A stretch of DNA of 63,862 bases, counting the filler, from Platydemus manokwari (Eukaryota): the NCBI GenBank assembly GCA_037951405.1. It is 5 parts of 5 records of this genome, joined end to end, with 100 filler letters (N's around TTAATTAATTAA, not from the genome) between each part and the next. Parts side by side here need not be neighbours in the genome. Positions count along the whole stretch, not along the records: positions 42,255 to 63,862 come from JBBMOY011333649.1; 4 more parts are not named here. One strand, written 5' to 3'. Shown in pieces: positions 48,300-57,110 of this stretch; position 1 is the stretch's first letter; every line of letters begins with the position of its first letter. Under the pieces are notes generated by a model. It did no database searches. It saw only the letters and a list, made by a program, of their open reading frames with translations, and had not been told where the DNA came from. Position numbers and translations under genes: made by a program.

Positions 48300-49150
48300 A
48301 TTATATGTGAAAATCATTCATTTATTTAGTAGATAAAACTAGGCGTGGATGAGTTTTTCATAAAGTAATTTTATATGTGAATTGTATCAGTCTCTTTGAG
48401 TTCTTTTTACTCTTTAAAAATCCCAAATAAAATTTATTACTGCTACTTCTACTATTCGCATTTCAGACAACTAGCTGGACTTTTCATAAATTTTTAACTT
48501 TTATCAAGAACCAATTCATGCGTTGGTTTTCAATTTTCTGAAGCTATTTTTCAGTACCCTATTTAAAAAATCTTTTCTATTATTTCTTTCGATAGGTTAT
48601 TCATTAAATTGAAGTGATAAAAAAATTGGTTTATATATAATATTTTATAGACGTTTCCAAAATTGAAAAAAATTAATTTTATTACATAGACTCCTCTCAA
48701 TCGACACAGCCAATAGAAAAGACGATATGAATTTCAACATTGGTTTATATTTTACTACTCCATCACTAATGAATGCTGGTCTGATTTTGAAATAAATTAA
48801 GTTTATCAAGCAGTTTGTTCTACTTAAGTTTTAAGTATTTCTTCAAATCTATATACATTCAGATACCAATTGAAATTTATGTGTGAAGATATAACTTCAA
48901 CCACTACTTGTCGAAACCTATTCGAATACGTGCGTTAAAAATCATGTATCGTCTTATCTTACTTTGATTATCTTATCAAGTTCACACTGAGGGATATATC
49001 TAGATCTTTTTATGAAAATTTATATTTGTATCACGCTAGGATCAAATCGCAAAATAATCAATTCAGTTATTTGCAATTAAATGAGACAAGCCATGTGTTA
49101 TTATAAAAAATACCAACTACTACAACGTTGTTCTAAAATTTAAGTGCAAT
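48300..49150 (-). mobile_element. CR1/L2-like LINE RT relic
   Basis: Minus-strand 'MYIDLKK', 'KLLDK' and 'AFISD' fragments in RT order. Very decayed. Confidence 0.35.
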
Positions 49151-49328
49151 TTAAGTGCTATAATATTGAATATCCCAATAATAATTTGGCTATTTCTTTA
49201 GTTGGGCTAATAGTTTTATTACATTTCATGTTCACATTTATTTCATTTCTGCGAAATTTCATTATTGCTTATTGTTTCTAATCCGGCAATCACAAACAAT
49301 CGAGTTCATCATTGAAAATTCTCTAACA

Positions 49329-49732
49329 CAGTGGTTCTCAACCCTGTGGTCACGATCCCAAACGGATTAGCCAAGCGTTTTTAAATGGGCCACCGAATTA
49401 TGGTAGGTGTACAAACCATTACATGTGAAAAATCGTGTTTTATGATGATATAGTTTGTGATAAATAGTTAGTGATGCTGATTAAACTACTTCTGTTTACA
49501 ATTACCTTGACTACCACAGTTAAGTATTTTATTGGTAATGTTCTTATCTAATAATCATATTATTATTATAGGTAATTCATTATTGGTTGTAAATCAATGA
49601 AATGTTGCAAATTGGTTTTATTAAATATGGTTAGTTATGACTTATTTTTAGTAATATTGATTTTCTTTGGGGTCGCCAAGATCTTAAAAATGGGAAAATG
49701 GGTCGTCATAGAAAAAAGGTTGAGAACCGTTG
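49329..49732. mobile_element. Non-autonomous hAT (Charlie/Buster-type) MITE, 404 bp
   Basis: TIRs CAGTGGTTCTCAACC ... GGTTGAGAACCGTTG (2 mismatches). Perfect 8-bp TSD CTCTAACA at 49321-49328 and 49733-49740. Confidence 0.93.
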
Positions 49733-51272
49733 CTCTAACAGAACATAACAATATTAATTTTTATGTTTTTATATAATATTTTAATTATATGAAATTATTC
49801 TATTGGTTTGCATTATCATGAAGCTAAAAATGTACCTATTGCAATGGAAATTACTTTGTGCTTAACAAGTATCCTCATAATAAATGCCTCATAGTATCCA
49901 GATATTGGATTTAAGCCAAAATTAAAAGACTTGGACAATATTTTTTTATTCACTCATCTTGAGTTAGTGAAAATTACAGCTGATTCAAAATTTTATCAAA
50001 TATCAAATGATAACACATATGTGTCCAATATATATCATTCGTTAGTATTATGCCGCCGTCCTTCATGAAACGATTTTTTACTTTTTATGTTGCCAAAAAA
50101 CCATGAATAGAAATTTGTGTTTCAAAAGCCTTATAGCATTTGAACGAATAATCCATTTAAAATGATATTATGGATAATTTCTCATGTGTTTCTCTTCATA
50201 AATTTCAAAACTTCAATCTGTTTTAAGTAACCAATGAATTTCAGATATTTCTTACACGACTATCGATAGTTGTTTCGAACTAATTATAAGTTTTATCAGC
50301 TATCTTTAGATAATTAACACTATTATTAGTCGATAAGCCTTTACAACTCAATAGTTGTAATGGCTGGAAGTATGTCTATTTAAAATAAAAGTTATCTCGT
50401 ATTCTAACAAACAATTGTCTTAAAATTGCGTATGATTTCCACCAAACGGTTTATTTATTATCCAGAAACCAATCGCAGATCCCATGATTATTAGTCTGTC
50501 AGCGAAAATGAATTTATTTCGTGTATTCGTTGACGTTTTGAATAAACGAAAATAAATGACATGTTTATTAGACAATGAAAAATGTTTTCATTAATTCCCG
50601 AATTGAAAGCATATAATATTAAAAAGTAATAATAACCAGAAGAGATTTCGACTAAAAATCAAATGGCATGGAATATCTTTTTACGTATTCGACAAGTGTA
50701 TTTGTGAATTTATGAAGTAACTTTTCTTCTTAATTTTTCTATTCCATGCATATCATTTTTAGGATTAATCATTGATAATGTAATTCAATATTTTTTTATC
50801 AATAAAATAATATTCTCTATTTTTTCATTTACAGGATTTTATAAAACATTTACAGACAACGAAATAAATAGACGCATTTATCTCCATTTCCATTGATGAT
50901 TTTTAATATTTATATGCACGTTTTGTATCATAAAAATGATTTGAAATCACCATATGGAATGTTACTAAGCAACGAAAGATTATTTAAAACAATTGAGAAA
51001 TTGATCCATTATTATTGAATGATGGTGAAAGATATTCATCTTTCAGAAAAGTTTTAAATCGTTATCGAATTATCTGTGTTCCAATTTTCATTATGAAAAT
51101 GAAAATAATTAAACATTTCACTAATGGTATCTTATAAAATTTTTCTCTTAAATGGAAATACTAATAATAAAATAATGTTACCATTTAACCATACGTTTCT
51201 GTTGATATTTCAAGAAATAAACACAGTAAATATATAATTTATTCATATACATATGTTAGCGCTGAAATCTTT

Positions 51273-51479
51273 TCAACCGAAATAGAAACCACCAGTACGA
51301 GATCGTTTGCTATTAGAGTCGAAATCTTTGACGTAACCTATTTCATCCGGATCGAATCGATTTCTTTCTCGGCCATTGATCATTTCTCCGAACATTTTCT
51401 CATGAATATGTGATAAAACGGCTTGAAAGTTTAGTAAAACAAAAAATAATACCAAAGCGACAGTAATTTTATTATTCAT
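51273..51479 (-). CDS. Neuropeptide prohormone (signal peptide plus C-terminal amidated peptide SRTGGFYF-NH2)
   Basis: 68-aa ORF: basic N-terminus, hydrophobic core and likely cleavage near AVLS|H. Dibasic KR is followed by SRTGGFYF-G-stop (amidation Gly). AATAAA lies 30 nt downstream of the stop (51238-51243). Confidence 0.88.
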   Translation of the reverse strand: MNNKITVALVLFFVLLNFQAVLSHIHEKMFGEMINGRERNRFDPDEIGYVKDFDSNSKRSRTGGFYFG

Positions 51480-51489
51480 CTTTGTGCGA

Positions 51490-51572
51490 AACTGATAGAG
51501 ATTAATGGGAGATTGCTTTAATAATAGGGGATTTTCGTTTGATTGGTTATCTAGCGCATCAATTCGGATTGG
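51490..51572 (-). promoter_or_regulatory. Core promoter of the neuropeptide gene (2x CCAAT, TATA-like box, Inr)
   Basis: On the minus strand: CCAAT at 51572-51568 and 51546-51542, TATTAAA starting at 51523, and Inr-like TCAGTT at 51495-51490. The TATA-like box is 30 nt upstream of the Inr A (51493). Confidence 0.7.
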
Positions 51573-52149
51573 TGGACAAACATGAAATCATTAATTAAAT
51601 TAATTATCCAAATGAATTAATAAATCAATTATAGACTGTTTATATAATGCCCTCCAGCAATGGTTTTCTATTATTAATTAGGACCGATTAGTGGGATTTG
51701 AAACTGTTAAAAGAACAATGCCGGAAAGAAACATGTTTTCAATATTTTTTCACCTTAGTTAATAACATTAGCATTTTTGTTAGTATGATAAGAAAATTAA
51801 ACGAGAGATCTAACTTAATTCATTGATTTATTTATCATAAATTAGTTAGGTTTTTGTCTTACGGTACGATTGGTTTTACTTTTATTTCAGAGAGTGATAA
51901 AAGTCACATATAATTAATTATTTTTCAAAACTGTTTTCTTTATTTTCATCGATAAATTTATTTTCTGTTACTGTTGACGAATGCATTTTAGAGGAAATTG
52001 ATTGAAACAAAAGTTTTAATAATTTATACATTTAAACTGAGCCAGTAATATTAAAAATAATGATTTTCATTCCCTATCCCTATACTTTGTATGATTTCTG
52101 AAACATTATAATTTTTCTTCCCATTTCAAACTTATTTTGAATTTATTTA

Positions 52150-53100
52150 TTCTTCTCCAATCACCAGAAACTGCAAAAGATGGCCTCAATTTCATGATTC
52201 TAATTATCTTTATGAATTTTTAAAACGATATTTTGTTAAAATTCTATTTTAAATTAACTTTACCAACCAGTGCCGAGACAGCCCAGAAAAATACACATCC
52301 AACTATAAGATAATCAATTAATTTTAGGTTTGCTAGTTATGATTTTATTATTTAAAATATCCATAATGGAATTTTAATCATGTCATTGTAAGTCAATATC
52401 AGATCTTTGAGGAGAAATCAGGAACATGAGGAATATTATTTCTACATTAACCGACAATCGCAATATTAACTGAATAACGGAAAATTGTAAAATATTTATA
52501 TAAAATTGGAATATTGTTGGGAAAAACATTCACTGTAAACATAGAAGTTCTGTTCTCGCAATAAGAATCTTTTACTTAAAATTAAATTTTCAAAATAATT
52601 ACATAATTCGAATCAGATTAATTGTGAAAGCCCTTTCTGAACTAATTCTCGAACCATTGTTAATACATTTCGATCAAGCATAGAATATGTTATGGAATAC
52701 GAAGCTGAGTCGTTCACATAAACTTCAGCCTATAATCAATCTTGTAAACACATATTCGGTACGATACTCAACAATGAAAGATAAATAAACTAAAATTACA
52801 ACAAGGTATAGAGAAAATCAATTCCGAACAATTTGTGAAAAAAATTTATTAAGTATTATTTTACTGAGTTTCTTTACGTGGCAGTAATCTTTCAACAATC
52901 GTTAAAAGCCAACATTCCCTTATATAATATCGATATAAATCCACATTAATGTCAAACAAGGTCAAAATTCGAAAAACATTTCATAACATCTGTTGCTGGA
53001 GAGGCAACTAGACAATTGTAACTTTCATATCGATAACATTAAAACTGTTGTCTGAGCATAAGAGATCAAATACATTGAAAAGTAAAACAAGGCATTTTGA
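52150..53100 (+). mobile_element. Probable piggyBac transposase relic
   Basis: Fragments 'AKDGL', 'IFEEKSG', 'LIHFD' and 'NFHIDN' in piggyBac order. Decayed. Confidence 0.4.
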
Positions 53101-56100
53101 GGATTCATTATATATTTGCTATGTTGACTTATTTTTGGTTAATTAATTGGATTTTGCGAATTGATATTGTATTTACGTTTCATTTTTTTAATTTTATCAC
53201 GAAAATCTAAAATCGAACAATATCTTGAGTCAGACTTAAAATCACTTAGCAACAAAATTCCTAATATGCATATCAAACAATATCAATACGTAATTTTAAG
53301 CTTTTCGAACATTTTAATATTTAAAAATAAAATTAAAAATTAACGAACTTAAAAATTTTAAAAATTTTGAAAAATATATATTATAATGTTGTTTATCTCA
53401 AATGATGATGAAAACAATTTATTAATATTTATATAATACATTATGAATTTTTGAGGTCGAACATTCACGATTTGTTAGGTTTGTTGAGTACATTATATAA
53501 ACAGGTAAAATAACCACAGAATTCATGGGTCAATACACAGAGATTCGACAACGCACGTGTCAACAGCCAATCAAATGCTTTCCATATTTAAATTCAAATT
53601 ATCAATTGGCTCACACCAAAAACAAGTAACAAACATCAAAATGGGCAATGGTATGAGAAATGCAAGAAAATTTGATAATAAACCAATGTAAATGTTGAGT
53701 AAAGCATAGAAACATCAAACAAACACCGATGATAAGTCTATAAACGGAGTTTGATCTCGCAAGTATTCGCTTGGTAACCCATATCTGTCGTGGGTTTTAT
53801 GTGATTTTCTAGAAAATAGTGATTATGATTGTTATCTTTGTCGCTGTCTAACTTTTAGGTGCTGATCCTATTTGTATTTATTATTACATTGTCAATTCTG
53901 TGTGTGATTTTGGGCCCTGATTATTTGATAATTTAGTTTTCTGTAAAATATTGTGATTCTTAATTATAATTTTGACATTCAGCCTTACAAAATATTAGCA
54001 GTATGTTTGAATGGCCACAAGGTAGAACCTTAAATTAGATTGGAAATGGTTCACTAAAAAGGGTTGATCCCGGATCAAAAGGCATTGAACTTCAAGTACC
54101 TGATAGAAATGATAATTGCAACAAGGATTCCGTTGTTCGATCAGCTTCTTATGAAGTTCGATTGAATTTAGGTCAAGTCCGAAATTCCATGACACTGTAT
54201 TGACATAGTTGGTAAGATCATATAACAATTTAATCACCACTTCCTGTGTTGACTGAATATTGACTGACATTTATGAATCCAAAGATTCTAGATCAGTATT
54301 TTCTAGAACACTAATTAAAGGACATACTTTTCAAATACTCAAATTTTACTGTAAAGCTTTTTTATTGATTTGTGGTATGGTTTTTTGCTTCGTAATTATC
54401 AAATTTTATTTTAATCTATTTGGAAAGTCATTTAATTACCGACTGTTAGCCGCTACTAATTTAAAAACCACACATTAAAAACGAACTGAAAAGTAAAGGC
54501 AGCACAAATCTATTTAAATACAAAAAAACAAATAAATTCAATTTTATATAAATGTGAATTTATATAAAATCAGACTTTAATTAGAATTAAAATTTGAATT
54601 CATGTAAAATTCAATTCATTAAAAATATCTCACACCGACAATAAGTATCTTCATTTATATTGAATTTCCTGGTTATAAATATGTAGGAAATTTACACGGA
54701 AGGCATTTTTTGATCAAAATAAACACTCTGTCAGTTTTCACATATTTTTCAGTAAGTTAAAATCCATACAAATACGGTTACATAAATGGCTTGCCTTAAA
54801 TGATGTAAAAGTTCAGTTGTTTGTGCTAGTTCTTTGTAAAATTGTTTATATAATTTGTATTTATTTTTTCGAATTAATTGGTGTACTGTATTCGTTTTTT
54901 TAGCATATATTTTTTTATCTAAAACCATTTTTGCAGTTTAAATTTCGATTTATAAATCACCAATATTTTCATATCAAACCAATGATTAAAAATCTAAAGT
55001 CATAAATCCAATTTGCAATAAGATAAATAAATTCCAATCCAAGTTTTGCCTGAAATTTCCTTTTTCCCAAACGGAACTGGAAATTATTTTAGATAATTTA
55101 TACATGTCAACAAAATGTAAATCCCAGCTTTATTATTTGAATTCGTTTTTCCAATTAACATTTCTTTTTTGATTTATGACAATCATCTGAAAAATATCTG
55201 TTATATGAAGTCGAGATAGAAAAGCTTTATTTTGACTTGGAATTACAGCACTTCTTAACTCATACATTTGAATTTAATTCGTAAAGTTCTACAGTGTCTC
55301 GATTTTATGGGCTCTTGATGATTATGTTTTTAAATATTTATACCATTTCACTCCGATTTAAATTCTTATATTTTAATACATTTATTTAAAACAACGTAAA
55401 TTGTATTAATATTTTTAGACACTTTGGTGCTTGGTATATTTAGACGAGAAACCATATATACACAATATTTTAATTATGATTAATTATATTAATTTTTTAA
55501 ATAAAATCATCATTATTAATATTAATAAAGTTGTTATATTAATGAGATGCAATTATCAATAAAAATCTATTTTGGGGTTTCTTATGGCTTGTTGAAAATT
55601 TTAGTTACTATATAATAATCCCATATTTTTGATTAATCGCAGGCTTATTTTTCTTCAATAAGAGAATAGTTATTCTAAAAAATTCTTTTCAGTACTATAT
55701 GCATCCATGTCGAATGGCCAAAATAAGATTGTTTATTATATTTCCGAAACCTCAAAAAGTAATAATAATAATTATTATTTTTCTATTATTTTCTAACAAA
55801 TTTACGAGAATCTTGGAAAGTCAGTAGAGTACCTCATACTTTGTCGTTGATGTAAGAGCAGTTTTATTTCAAAGTAATAAATTTTAATGTTCCTGATTAT
55901 TAAGAGTCACACTATTTTATGGAAAAATCAATGAAAAATAGTTAGCTTTGATTTTTTTATGACATTTTTAGCAGAAATCTCTTGTCTCATTCATGGTAAT
56001 ATGGTCATTAAAACATTGATTGTATTGAAATATAACCGATGTAATATGATCTGTAGTGTGCAATTAAAAAGCTCTTCCAACCAACTGTTATATTTTTCAT

Positions 56101-56325: not shown

Positions 56326-57110
56326 GTTAAGTGGTCAAAATATTAAAAATTAAATAAATAAACTACCTTTCACTGAAAATTTGTCCTATTTTGGCCTTCA
56401 GTCGGTCTCACCAGTACCAGAGATATATAGGACTTATTGATCTCTCGGAGCCTTCAACAACGATGGCTGCAATGATGATGGGGGTTGTTATATGATACAG
56501 ATAGTGTCCTATTTCGGTATTCCATGGGTCTCACCCGATACTGATAAAGGTAAAAGAAATCTAGAAAAGAACCGCCGGTTATATACTAATTTCAAGACAA
56601 AATCATCAAATAATCCAAAACCCAGAATTACTATATCGTGCCTAAAAATCCACGCAATCCCCGACTGTTAATAAATTTTGACGCATTCTTGCCGTCAGGA
56701 CAAATCCCATTGGAGTACAGAAACTTAAAGAAATTCAACTCATAATGGATTACAGATTGAGGCTCGACTATGATGAATTATCGCGGTTCACTTAGATAAT
56801 TAATTAAAAATAATGATTAAGTCACAATGAAATATAATCAATTGTGATTATTATTATAAAGTACATAACATAAACTAGAATGAATAGTTGAAAATTTCTG
56901 TTTAAATTCAATAAATAGTAAGTAGATTGGAAATATTTCATTTTACATTTTGTTTTCAGGTTTTAGGATGTCAAAGTGCGAATGCACTAGGCTATCCATG
57001 GTAAATAGATTTAGTGTTTTAAATTTATTGTTATATTCAAATAAATATTATTATTTCATTTAGTTTAAATTCAGTACCCATTTAGTTACAAACAGCCCAT
57101 ATAACAATAT
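56326..57110. repeat. Diverged ~800-bp duplicated segment, copy 2
   Basis: Colinear with 31655-32500 in the same orientation. Confidence 0.8.

What the first reader, a model, noticed from the sequence alone, without database searches (positions are those of the whole stretch)
51238..51572. Compact neuropeptide gene predicted to release an unfamiliar amidated octapeptide, SRTGGFYF-NH2
Seen: a 68-aa single-exon ORF with a signal peptide, a spacer, KR, then SRTGGFYF-G-stop. It has two CCAAT boxes, a TATA-like box at -30, an Inr-like TCAGTT and a nearby AATAAA, so the whole transcription unit fits in ~340 bp inside transposon debris. Established: KR cleavage by PC1/2 and amidation of a C-terminal Gly by PAM define neuropeptide maturation. 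Inference: I cannot place the GGFYF-amide ending in a flatworm peptide family I know, so this may be an uncharacterised ligand-GPCR system. The spacer (R-E-R-N-R|FDPDEIGY...) could yield a second peptide.
Basis: partly seen in the sequence, partly recalled or inferred. Interest (0 to 1): 0.8.

Follow-up and report, generated by a model that had tools for sequence, protein, structure and literature searches.

The report
Candidate intronless flatworm-type neuropeptide precursor gene
A 68-residue open reading frame looks in every sequence feature like a small neuropeptide precursor gene that would release an unfamiliar amidated peptide (SRTGGFYF-NH2), but no RNA and no relative could be found, so it is a good candidate and not a proven gene.

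Summary
Window 51273-51479 (minus strand) encodes a 68-aa ORF with a canonical signal peptide, an acidic spacer, KR, then SRTGGFYF-G-stop.

Length alone means nothing here. The strict combination (signal + KR + 4-15 residues + Gly-stop) is expected about 2e-4 times per piece, or about 10 times per Gb. Three further points favour a real gene:
- The ORF is the CpG-densest 207-nt window of the 21.6-kb piece, and its amino-acid make-up is unlike chance ORFs.
- It is single copy.
- Its layout and composition closely match a real intronless planarian prohormone gene, an SPP-12 orthologue on a metagenome contig.

Missing evidence: the only run holding the locus is genomic, so there is no RNA evidence. 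All protein and DNA searches found no relative. The peptide is absent from the Schmidtea prohormone catalogue and from the searchable literature. The organism could not be identified.

Verdict: probably (about 0.6) a genuine, lineage-restricted secretory peptide precursor of the ordinary PC2/PAM-processed kind. It would be a new member of a known kind. Expression and conservation are untested. A chance ORF remains a serious rival.

The parts
51568..51572 (-). Distal CCAAT box, -79..-75 from the Inr-like A at 51493.
   Evidence: Sequence. Two or more CCAAT within 120 nt upstream occur in 1.5% of simulated ORFs. The SPP-12 orthologue L001 has CCAAT/ATTGG boxes at comparable distances.
51542..51546 (-). 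Proximal CCAAT box, -53..-49.
   Evidence: Sequence. L001 has a CCAAT 22 nt before its TATA box, and here the gap is 16 nt.
51517..51526 (-). TATA-like TATTATTAAA, -33..-24 from the Inr-like A.
   Evidence: Sequence. It carries little weight alone in DNA of 25% GC. The position is canonical.
51490..51495 (-). Inr-like TCAGTT. The inferred start at A 51493 gives a 14-nt 5' UTR.
   Evidence: Sequence. The transcription start is inferred, not shown.
51411..51479 (-). Start codon (A at -3) and predicted signal peptide, residues 1-23: n-region MNNK, h-region ITVALVLFFVLLNF, c-region QAVLS. Cleavage is inferred after Ser23.
   Evidence: My hydropathy and charge rule is met by 1.2% of simulated ORFs. 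SignalP was not available.
51309..51410 (-). Spacer, residues 24-57. It is acidic and contains G-R-E-R-N-R and the motif FDPDEIGY.
   Evidence: The share of G, D, E, R, A and P residues over the whole ORF is 0.32, against 0.15 +/- 0.04 in simulated ORFs. Spacer peptides are inference.
51303..51308 (-). Lys58-Arg59 dibasic cleavage site. The context is KRSR, so cleavage after Arg61 is also possible.
   Evidence: Sequence. Processing is inferred from established prohormone convertase specificity.
51279..51302 (-). Predicted mature peptide SRTGGFYF, residues 60-67.
   Evidence: No match in papers, the Collins 2010 supplements or protein and DNA collections.
51273..51278 (-). Gly68, the amide donor, followed by stop TGA.
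   Evidence: Amidation is inferred.
51238..51243 (-). AATAAA, starting 30 nt after the stop codon.
   Evidence: It occurs within 60 nt in 18% of simulated ORFs. L001 has its AATAAA 32 nt after the stop.
51211..51226 (-). GU/U-rich stretch (TGTGTTTATTTCTTG), a possible downstream element of the poly(A) site.
   Evidence: Sequence. Inference only.

Best explanation
This is a genuine, intronless, single-copy gene of about 275 nt of transcript. A TATA/CCAAT-type promoter drives it, and it encodes a 68-aa secretory prohormone.

Inferred pathway:
1. The signal peptide is removed after Ser23.
2. A PC2-type convertase cuts at Lys58-Arg59, or after Arg61 in the KRSR context.
3. Peptidylglycine alpha-amidating enzymes use the terminal Gly68. 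This gives SRTGGFYF-NH2 ([M+H]+ 933.458) or TGGFYF-NH2 (690.325), a secreted signalling peptide.

Shown: the ORF, the motifs, the compositional island, single-copy status, and the likeness of layout to a real planarian prohormone gene.

Inferred: transcription, processing, amidation, neuronal expression and a receptor.
For: ORF and motifs:
- They are present as described.
- It is the only one of 26 ATG-ORFs >=40 aa in the piece that meets either the signal test or the KR..G-stop test. It is the only one of 14 signal-like small ORFs with an amidation motif.
- The strict architecture appeared 0 times in 20 Mb and 0 times in 24 Mb of simulated sequence. The expectation is about 2e-4 per piece.

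Composition:
- ORF GC is 0.343 against 0.254 for the piece, and GC1 is 0.44 (tail 0.0017).
- The share of G, D, E, R, A and P residues is 0.32, reached by none of 2945 simulated ORFs.
- Upstream GC has a tail of 0.004.
- The ORF is the CpG-densest 207-nt window of the whole piece.

Gene signals: only this ORF combines >=2 CCAAT/ATTGG upstream, AATAAA <=60 nt downstream and a purine at -3. The simulated frequency is 0.33%.

Copy number: depth is about 15-20 across the unit, so it is single copy, and one 3.7-kb contig is identical to it.

Positive control: a metagenome contig (L001) carries an intronless SPP-12 orthologue.
- L001 has CCAAT/ATTGG/CCAAT, then a TATA box, a short leader, a 70-aa ORF, and AATAAA 32 nt after the stop.
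- Its ORF GC is 0.36 and its G/D/E/R/A/P share is 0.36. The candidate has nearly the same layout and composition.

Language-model neighbours with names are nearly all peptide-hormone precursors: PDH, DH31, NPF, PrRP, GnRH and gastrin, at 0.84-0.89. This is a lead only.
Against: - No RNA evidence. The single run that holds the locus behaves as genomic DNA.
- No relative in the word search, in HMMER against 1.84 billion representatives, in Pfam, in the exact look-up, or in two metagenome scans.
- The peptide is not in the Schmidtea catalogue.
- Genome-wide, about 10 strict and about 580 loose look-alikes per Gb are expected by chance.
- The promoter motifs were chosen after the fact.
- The real piece is compositionally patchy: 4 of 10 other ORFs >=55 aa have GC >=0.33. 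The Markov tails therefore overstate significance.
- The Atlas recognition value (2259) is just under the level that 91% of real families reach.
- The positive control is a single gene.
Confidence: 0.58

Rival explanations
1. This is a chance ORF. It lies in an AT-rich, non-coding stretch with a slightly GC-richer patch that happens to read as signal peptide + KR + Gly-stop and has promoter-like words nearby. Nothing is expressed.
For: - ORFs of this length are common here.
- Strict look-alikes are expected at about 10 per Gb and loose ones at about 580 per Gb.
- The finding comes from a scan of very many windows.
- There is no transcript and no homologue.
- TATA-like and AATAAA words are cheap at 25% GC.
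Against: - The ORF coincides with the top CpG peak of the piece.
- Its amino-acid make-up was reached by none of 2945 simulated ORFs and matches a real prohormone gene.
- The joint promoter, poly(A) and Kozak features occur in 0.33% of simulated ORFs.
- The layout is the same as the SPP-12 orthologue.
Confidence: 0.27
2. This is a real gene for a small secreted peptide that is not a neuropeptide. It could be a gland, epidermal or antimicrobial-type secretory product, or a lineage-specific orphan. The KR and terminal Gly would then be incidental or used differently.
For: The evidence for a real gene says nothing about the cell type. There is no family assignment. The peptide has one copy, whereas many flatworm neuropeptide precursors carry several.
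Against: KR followed by a short aromatic-ended peptide and Gly-stop is the specific signature of amidated neuropeptides. The named language-model neighbours are hormone precursors. Single-peptide precursors of about 70 aa exist in planarians, for example SPP-12.
Confidence: 0.1
3. This is a divergent or decaying member of a known flatworm family, either pedal-peptide-like (ppp) or NYFamide (npp-12), reduced to one unit.
For: The spacer motif FDPDEIGYV recalls Smed PPP-1 YYDPIGGGLL and PPP-2 YFDKIGSDLL. The YF-Gly ending recalls NPP-12 NYFG.
Against: Only 3-5 residues are shared, with a 2-residue insertion. There are no repeated units flanked by KR. There is no hit in the word or HMMER searches, which do hold deposited planarian prohormones. 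The resemblance was noticed after the fact.
Confidence: 0.05

Closest known systems
Planarian secreted-peptide prohormones (Smed spp/npp genes, Collins et al. 2010, PMC2953531), for example SPP-12 and its orthologues
   Same: - A precursor of about 70 aa: signal peptide, acidic spacer, dibasic site, short C-terminal peptide.
- An intronless genomic unit with CCAAT boxes, a TATA box, a short leader, and AATAAA about 30 nt after the stop.
- The same GC and amino-acid make-up.
   Different: There is no sequence similarity to any listed precursor. GGF, FYF and GFYF are absent from the 51-gene tables. SPP-12 peptides are not amidated.
Smed-npp-12 (NYFamide precursor)
   Same: A peptide ending in Tyr-Phe-Gly, so a YFamide end is predicted. 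The precursor is short and has an acidic spacer before KR.
   Different: npp-12 has three to four tandem NYFG units separated by KR. Here there is one 8-residue peptide at the very C-terminus, and nothing beyond YFG can be aligned.
Pedal peptide/orcokinin-type precursors (Smed-ppp-1, ppp-2)
   Same: The motif [FY]-D-P-..-I-G is in the spacer. There is a Gly-Phe-x-Phe-x ending, as in orcokinin-type peptides. The orcokinin comparison is from my own knowledge.
   Different: The motif occurs once, with a 2-residue insertion. There are no KR-flanked repeats. KR interrupts the would-be second peptide. Those peptides are not amidated.
Opioid-type YGGF peptides
   Same: A Gly-Gly-Phe core.
   Different: There is no N-terminal Tyr (or Phe) directly before Gly-Gly. 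This is a different precursor type and the likeness is coincidental (own knowledge).

Membership tests
Amidated neuropeptide prohormone (PC2/CPE/PAM-processed), generic | N-terminal signal peptide | tested here: met
   MNNK + a 14-residue hydrophobic core (mean Kyte-Doolittle about 2.7) + QAVLS, with V at -3 and S at -1. It passes my rule, which 1.2% of simulated ORFs meet. SignalP was not run.
Amidated neuropeptide prohormone (PC2/CPE/PAM-processed), generic | Dibasic convertase site flanking the peptide | tested here: met
   K58-R59, in the context S-K-R-S-R.
Amidated neuropeptide prohormone (PC2/CPE/PAM-processed), generic | Gly directly after the peptide as amide donor | tested here: met
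   Gly68 followed by TGA. KR.{4,15}G-stop occurs in 0.08% of simulated ORFs.
Amidated neuropeptide prohormone (PC2/CPE/PAM-processed), generic | Transcribed, in neurons or neuroendocrine cells | not testable with these tools
   Only one run holds the locus and it is genomic: even depth of about 15, and a 3.7-kb contig across the unit.
Amidated neuropeptide prohormone (PC2/CPE/PAM-processed), generic | Mature peptide detectable, and dependent on pc2/PHM | not testable with these tools
   Expected masses were computed. No matching mass is in the Collins 2010 Schmidtea tables, which are for another species.
Amidated neuropeptide prohormone (PC2/CPE/PAM-processed), generic | Bioactive peptide conserved in related species | tested here: inconclusive
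   No relative was found. A control shows that the databases hold only deposited planarian prohormones and a stray metagenome contig.
Catalogued Schmidtea mediterranea spp/npp precursors | Sequence identity or a shared mature peptide with a listed gene | tested here: not met
   GGFYF, GFYF, FYFG, RTGG, FDPDE, GGF and FYF are absent from all 8 supplementary tables. The species may differ.
npp-12 (NYFamide) | Tandem NYFG units separated by KR | tested here: not met
   There is a single C-terminal peptide and only YFG is shared.
Pedal peptide / orcokinin type | Several KR-flanked copies of x-[YF]-D-x-I-G-x-x-L-L or a similar unit | tested here: not met
   There is one degenerate motif (FDPDEIGYV) flanked by R and K, and no repeats.

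The most novel reading that the evidence does not exclude
The gene is real and neuronal, and (S/R)TGGFYF-NH2 founds a flatworm 'FYFamide' peptide family not yet in any catalogue, with its own unassigned GPCR. As of 2026 only 52 neuropeptide genes are counted in the model planarian (bioRxiv 10.64898/2026.10.10.758126). It would therefore add a new ligand to test in regeneration, reproduction and behaviour.
Probability: 0.35. Interest if true: 0.5.

Novelty: new member of a known kind. Interest (0 to 1): 0.42.

Why it matters
If expressed, this would be an uncatalogued amidated peptide in a group of animals where neuropeptides control germline development and, according to a 2026 preprint, regeneration and stem-cell function (PMC2953531; bioRxiv 10.64898/2026.10.10.758126). 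It would also show that very compact intronless prohormone units can be found from raw genome sequence through a shared layout: CCAAT boxes, a TATA box, a short leader, an ORF of about 70 aa, then AATAAA about 30 nt after the stop. The mechanism itself (signal peptide, convertase, amidation) is textbook. The gain would be one new ligand and a search recipe, not a new principle.

Tried and rejected
Homology searches, all blank:
- Word search with the 68-aa ORF.
- Word search with the 104-codon frame, to reach kin up to 182 aa.
- HMMER against 1.84 billion representatives.
- Pfam.
- Exact-sequence look-up.
- Degenerate DNA pattern for KR-x-x-TGGFYFG-stop in metagenome contigs.
- The search for related loci in metagenomes: 599 pattern matches, none confirmed.

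Control: Smed SPP-12 finds itself, Dugesia japonica neuropeptide-49 and one ENA contig. The blanks therefore exclude close kinship to deposited planarian prohormones. They say little about unsampled flatworms.

RNA: the look-up of sequencing runs gave one run of unknown kind. Laid on the locus it is genomic, so expression is untested.

Literature:
- No neuropeptide with GGFYF, GFYFG or FYFamide, and nothing useful for NYFamide.
- Koziol 2016, McVeigh 2009 and Shimoyama 2016 are not held, so their lists were not checked.
- The Schmidtea peptide mass tables hold no 933.46. The 690.39 entry there is NPP-1 ASFVRLa.

Surroundings:
- No paralogue or decayed copy in the piece.
- No Pfam domain in 20 long frames.
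- No Rfam family.
- No internal repeats of 40 nt or more that matter.

Organism: not identified. The 25% GC and the likeness to a triclad gene fit a planarian but do not prove it.

Tools not available:
- The search of earlier findings was not open.
The 'hormone-precursor neighbours' result therefore has no negative control.
- Smed SPP-12 and D. japonica NP-49 loci were not on record, so there is only one promoter control.

Structure prediction was judged uninformative for a 68-aa prohormone and was not run.

Full report
**1. What is there**

The piece (42255-63862) is 25.4% GC. On the minus strand, 51479-51273 is an ATG-to-TGA frame of 68 codons:

MNNKITVALVLFFVLLNFQAVLS HIHEKMFGEMINGRERNRFDPDEIGYVKDFDSNS KR SRTGGFYF G stop

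- The stop-to-stop frame is 104 codons, the second longest in the piece.
- The ATG is the first in that frame and has A at -3.
- Upstream on the same strand lie CCAAT (51572-51568), CCAAT (51546-51542), TATTATTAAA (51526-51517) and TCAGTT (51495-51490).
- Downstream, AATAAA (51243-51238) starts 30 nt after the stop and is followed by a GU/U-rich run.
- If the A of TCAGTT is the start site, the boxes sit at -79, -53 and -33. The leader is then 14 nt and the transcript about 275 nt.

**2. Is it more than chance?**

Length alone is not. Four ATG-ORFs of 68 aa or more occur in the piece, and 2.5 are expected.

Architecture is more telling.
- I used an explicit rule: a basic n-region, a 12-residue uncharged core with mean hydropathy >=2.2, and KR.{4,15}G-stop.
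- The candidate is the only one of 26 real ATG-ORFs >=40 aa that meets either half of the rule.
- In 20 Mb of 3rd-order Markov sequence, 278 of 23,604 ORFs met the signal half, 19 met the C-terminal half and none met both. That is about 0.2 expected per 20 Mb, 2e-4 per piece, and about 10 per Gb.
- A model trained on the GC-richer patches of the piece gives about 3 per Gb from those patches, an upper bound.
- A loose definition (any dibasic pair, a relaxed signal, G-stop or G-basic-basic) gives about 580 per Gb.

A reader scanning a whole genome will therefore meet such ORFs by chance. Architecture alone leaves roughly even odds.

**3. Independent signals**

- Composition. ORF GC is 0.343, with codon-position GC of 0.44/0.29/0.29. 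Against 2945 simulated ORFs of 60-80 aa the tails are 0.011 (GC), 0.0017 (GC1) and 0.004 (upstream GC).
- Amino acids. The share of G, D, E, R, A and P residues is 0.32, and no simulated ORF reached it.
- CpG. The ORF is the CpG-densest 207-nt window of the entire piece, with 12 CpG. Only windows that overlap it reach that number. The 335-nt unit has 17 CpG, with a tail of 0.0014.
- Gene signals. Only this ORF among the 26 combines >=2 CCAAT/ATTGG within 120 nt upstream, AATAAA within 60 nt after the stop, and a purine at -3. The simulated frequency is 0.33%, or 5e-5 together with the amino-acid criterion.
- Caveats. The piece is patchy: 4 of 10 other ORFs of at least 55 aa have GC >=0.33. The promoter words were chosen after the fact. 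These tails are therefore optimistic.

**4. Copy number and reads**

One public run holds the locus. Its contigs cover 49000-54000 at a depth of about 13-22, and one 3717-nt contig is identical over 50756-54000. It is therefore genomic DNA and the unit is single copy. No RNA run was found. Expression is untested, not refuted.

**5. A positive control for the gene layout**

As a control of database coverage I searched Smed SPP-12, with the sequence taken from the Collins 2010 supplement.
- It found itself, Dugesia japonica neuropeptide-49 (79% identity) and a 79-aa protein (60% identity) on an ENA metagenome contig.
- That contig (L001, 1295 nt) carries the orthologue as one uninterrupted ORF.
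- Its layout is CCAAT at 782, ATTGG at 827, CCAAT at 844, TATATAAAA from 870, ATG at 923, stop ending at 1135, and AATAAA at 1167, 32 nt after the stop.
- Its ORF has GC 0.362, a G/D/E/R/A/P share of 0.357, and an N/K/I/F/Y/L share of 0.414.
- The candidate's values are 0.343, 0.324 and 0.426.

A bona fide planarian-type prohormone gene thus has the same compact intronless layout and the same composition. This is the strongest argument that the promoter-like words are meaningful here. It is one gene only.

**6. Relatives and family**

No relative was found in any of these:
- the word search;
- HMMER over 1.84 billion representatives;
- Pfam;
- the exact look-up;
- two metagenome scans.

The Schmidtea catalogue has no GGF, FYF or GFYF. 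Only npp-12 (NYFamide) shares YFG.

The spacer motif FDPDEIGYV recalls the planarian pedal-peptide-like units YYDPIGGGLL and YFDKIGSDLL. It occurs once, has an insertion, and was noticed after the fact, so I do not file the gene there.

Language-model features place the ORF next to peptide-hormone precursors: PDH 0.89, DH31 0.87, NPF 0.86, PrRP 0.85, GnRH 0.84 and gastrin 0.84.

**7. Mechanism**

Shown are the ORF, the motifs, the compositional island and single-copy status. The rest is inferred from established prohormone biology:
- co-translational entry to the ER and signal cleavage after Ser23 (V at -3, S at -1);
- PC2-type cleavage at K58-R59, or after R61 in the K-R-S-R context;
- amidation by PHM/PAL using Gly68, which gives SRTGGFYF-NH2 ([M+H]+ 933.458) or TGGFYF-NH2 ([M+H]+ 690.325);
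- a possible second amidated peptide, HIHEKMFGEMIN-NH2, from the G-R-E-R-N-R stretch, plus acidic spacer peptides. This last point is speculative.

**8. Surroundings**

'Transposon debris' is only loosely true.
- A 404-bp hAT-type MITE lies at 49329-49732, with a perfect 8-bp target-site duplication (CTCTAACA) and SPIN-like termini.
- It is about 1.5 kb beyond the gene's 3' end and is present in roughly a thousand copies.
- A moderately repeated stretch begins near 53342.
- No transposon protein domain, RNA family or paralogue was found.

**9. Verdict**

- About 0.58: a real secretory, probably neuro-, peptide precursor gene.
- About 0.27: a chance ORF.
- About 0.10: a secreted peptide that is not a neuropeptide.
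- About 0.05: a degenerate member of ppp or npp-12.

If real it is a new member of a well-known kind. The organism is unidentified. The flatworm assignment rests on AT-richness and on the likeness to the triclad control gene.

Noticed in passing
window 49321-49740: A 404-bp non-autonomous hAT element lies at 49329-49732. It has a perfect 8-bp target-site duplication, CTCTAACA. Its termini (CAGTGGTTCTCAACCCTGTGG... / ...GGTTGAGAACCGTTG) match the TIRs tabulated for SPIN and hAT-N1 elements of Anolis in PMC3014272. Depth reaches about 20,000 against about 15 in the flanks, which suggests about a thousand copies. SPIN-group hATs are noted for horizontal transfer between distant animals.
   Followed up: partly
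window 53342-54270: A moderately repeated stretch, with depth of 30-200 against about 15. It includes the longest ATG-ORF of the piece (53995-54270, minus strand, 91 aa, GC 0.37), which has no Pfam match. It may be an old mobile element.
   Followed up: partly
window 56441-56700 and 50398-50605: These are the next-highest CpG peaks of the piece, with 9 and 10 CpG per 207 nt. The first has GC 0.38 and overlaps a 76-codon open frame with no Pfam match. They may be exons or other constrained sequence.
   Followed up: no
L001 (ENA ERZ27256860, k141_1935302) 782-1172 and 229-438: This metagenome contig carries planarian-type nuclear DNA. It holds an intronless SPP-12 orthologue with CCAAT/ATTGG/CCAAT, a TATA box and AATAAA. 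It also holds a fragment matching alkaline ceramidase on the other strand. It is useful as a template of a compact prohormone gene.
   Followed up: partly
window 51327-51356 (residues 42-51 of the ORF): The spacer motif FDPDEIGYV resembles the repeated units of Smed pedal-peptide-like precursors, YYDPIGGGLL and YFDKIGSDLL. The C-terminal GFYFG resembles the GFxFx ending of orcokinin-type peptides. This may be chance.
   Followed up: partly
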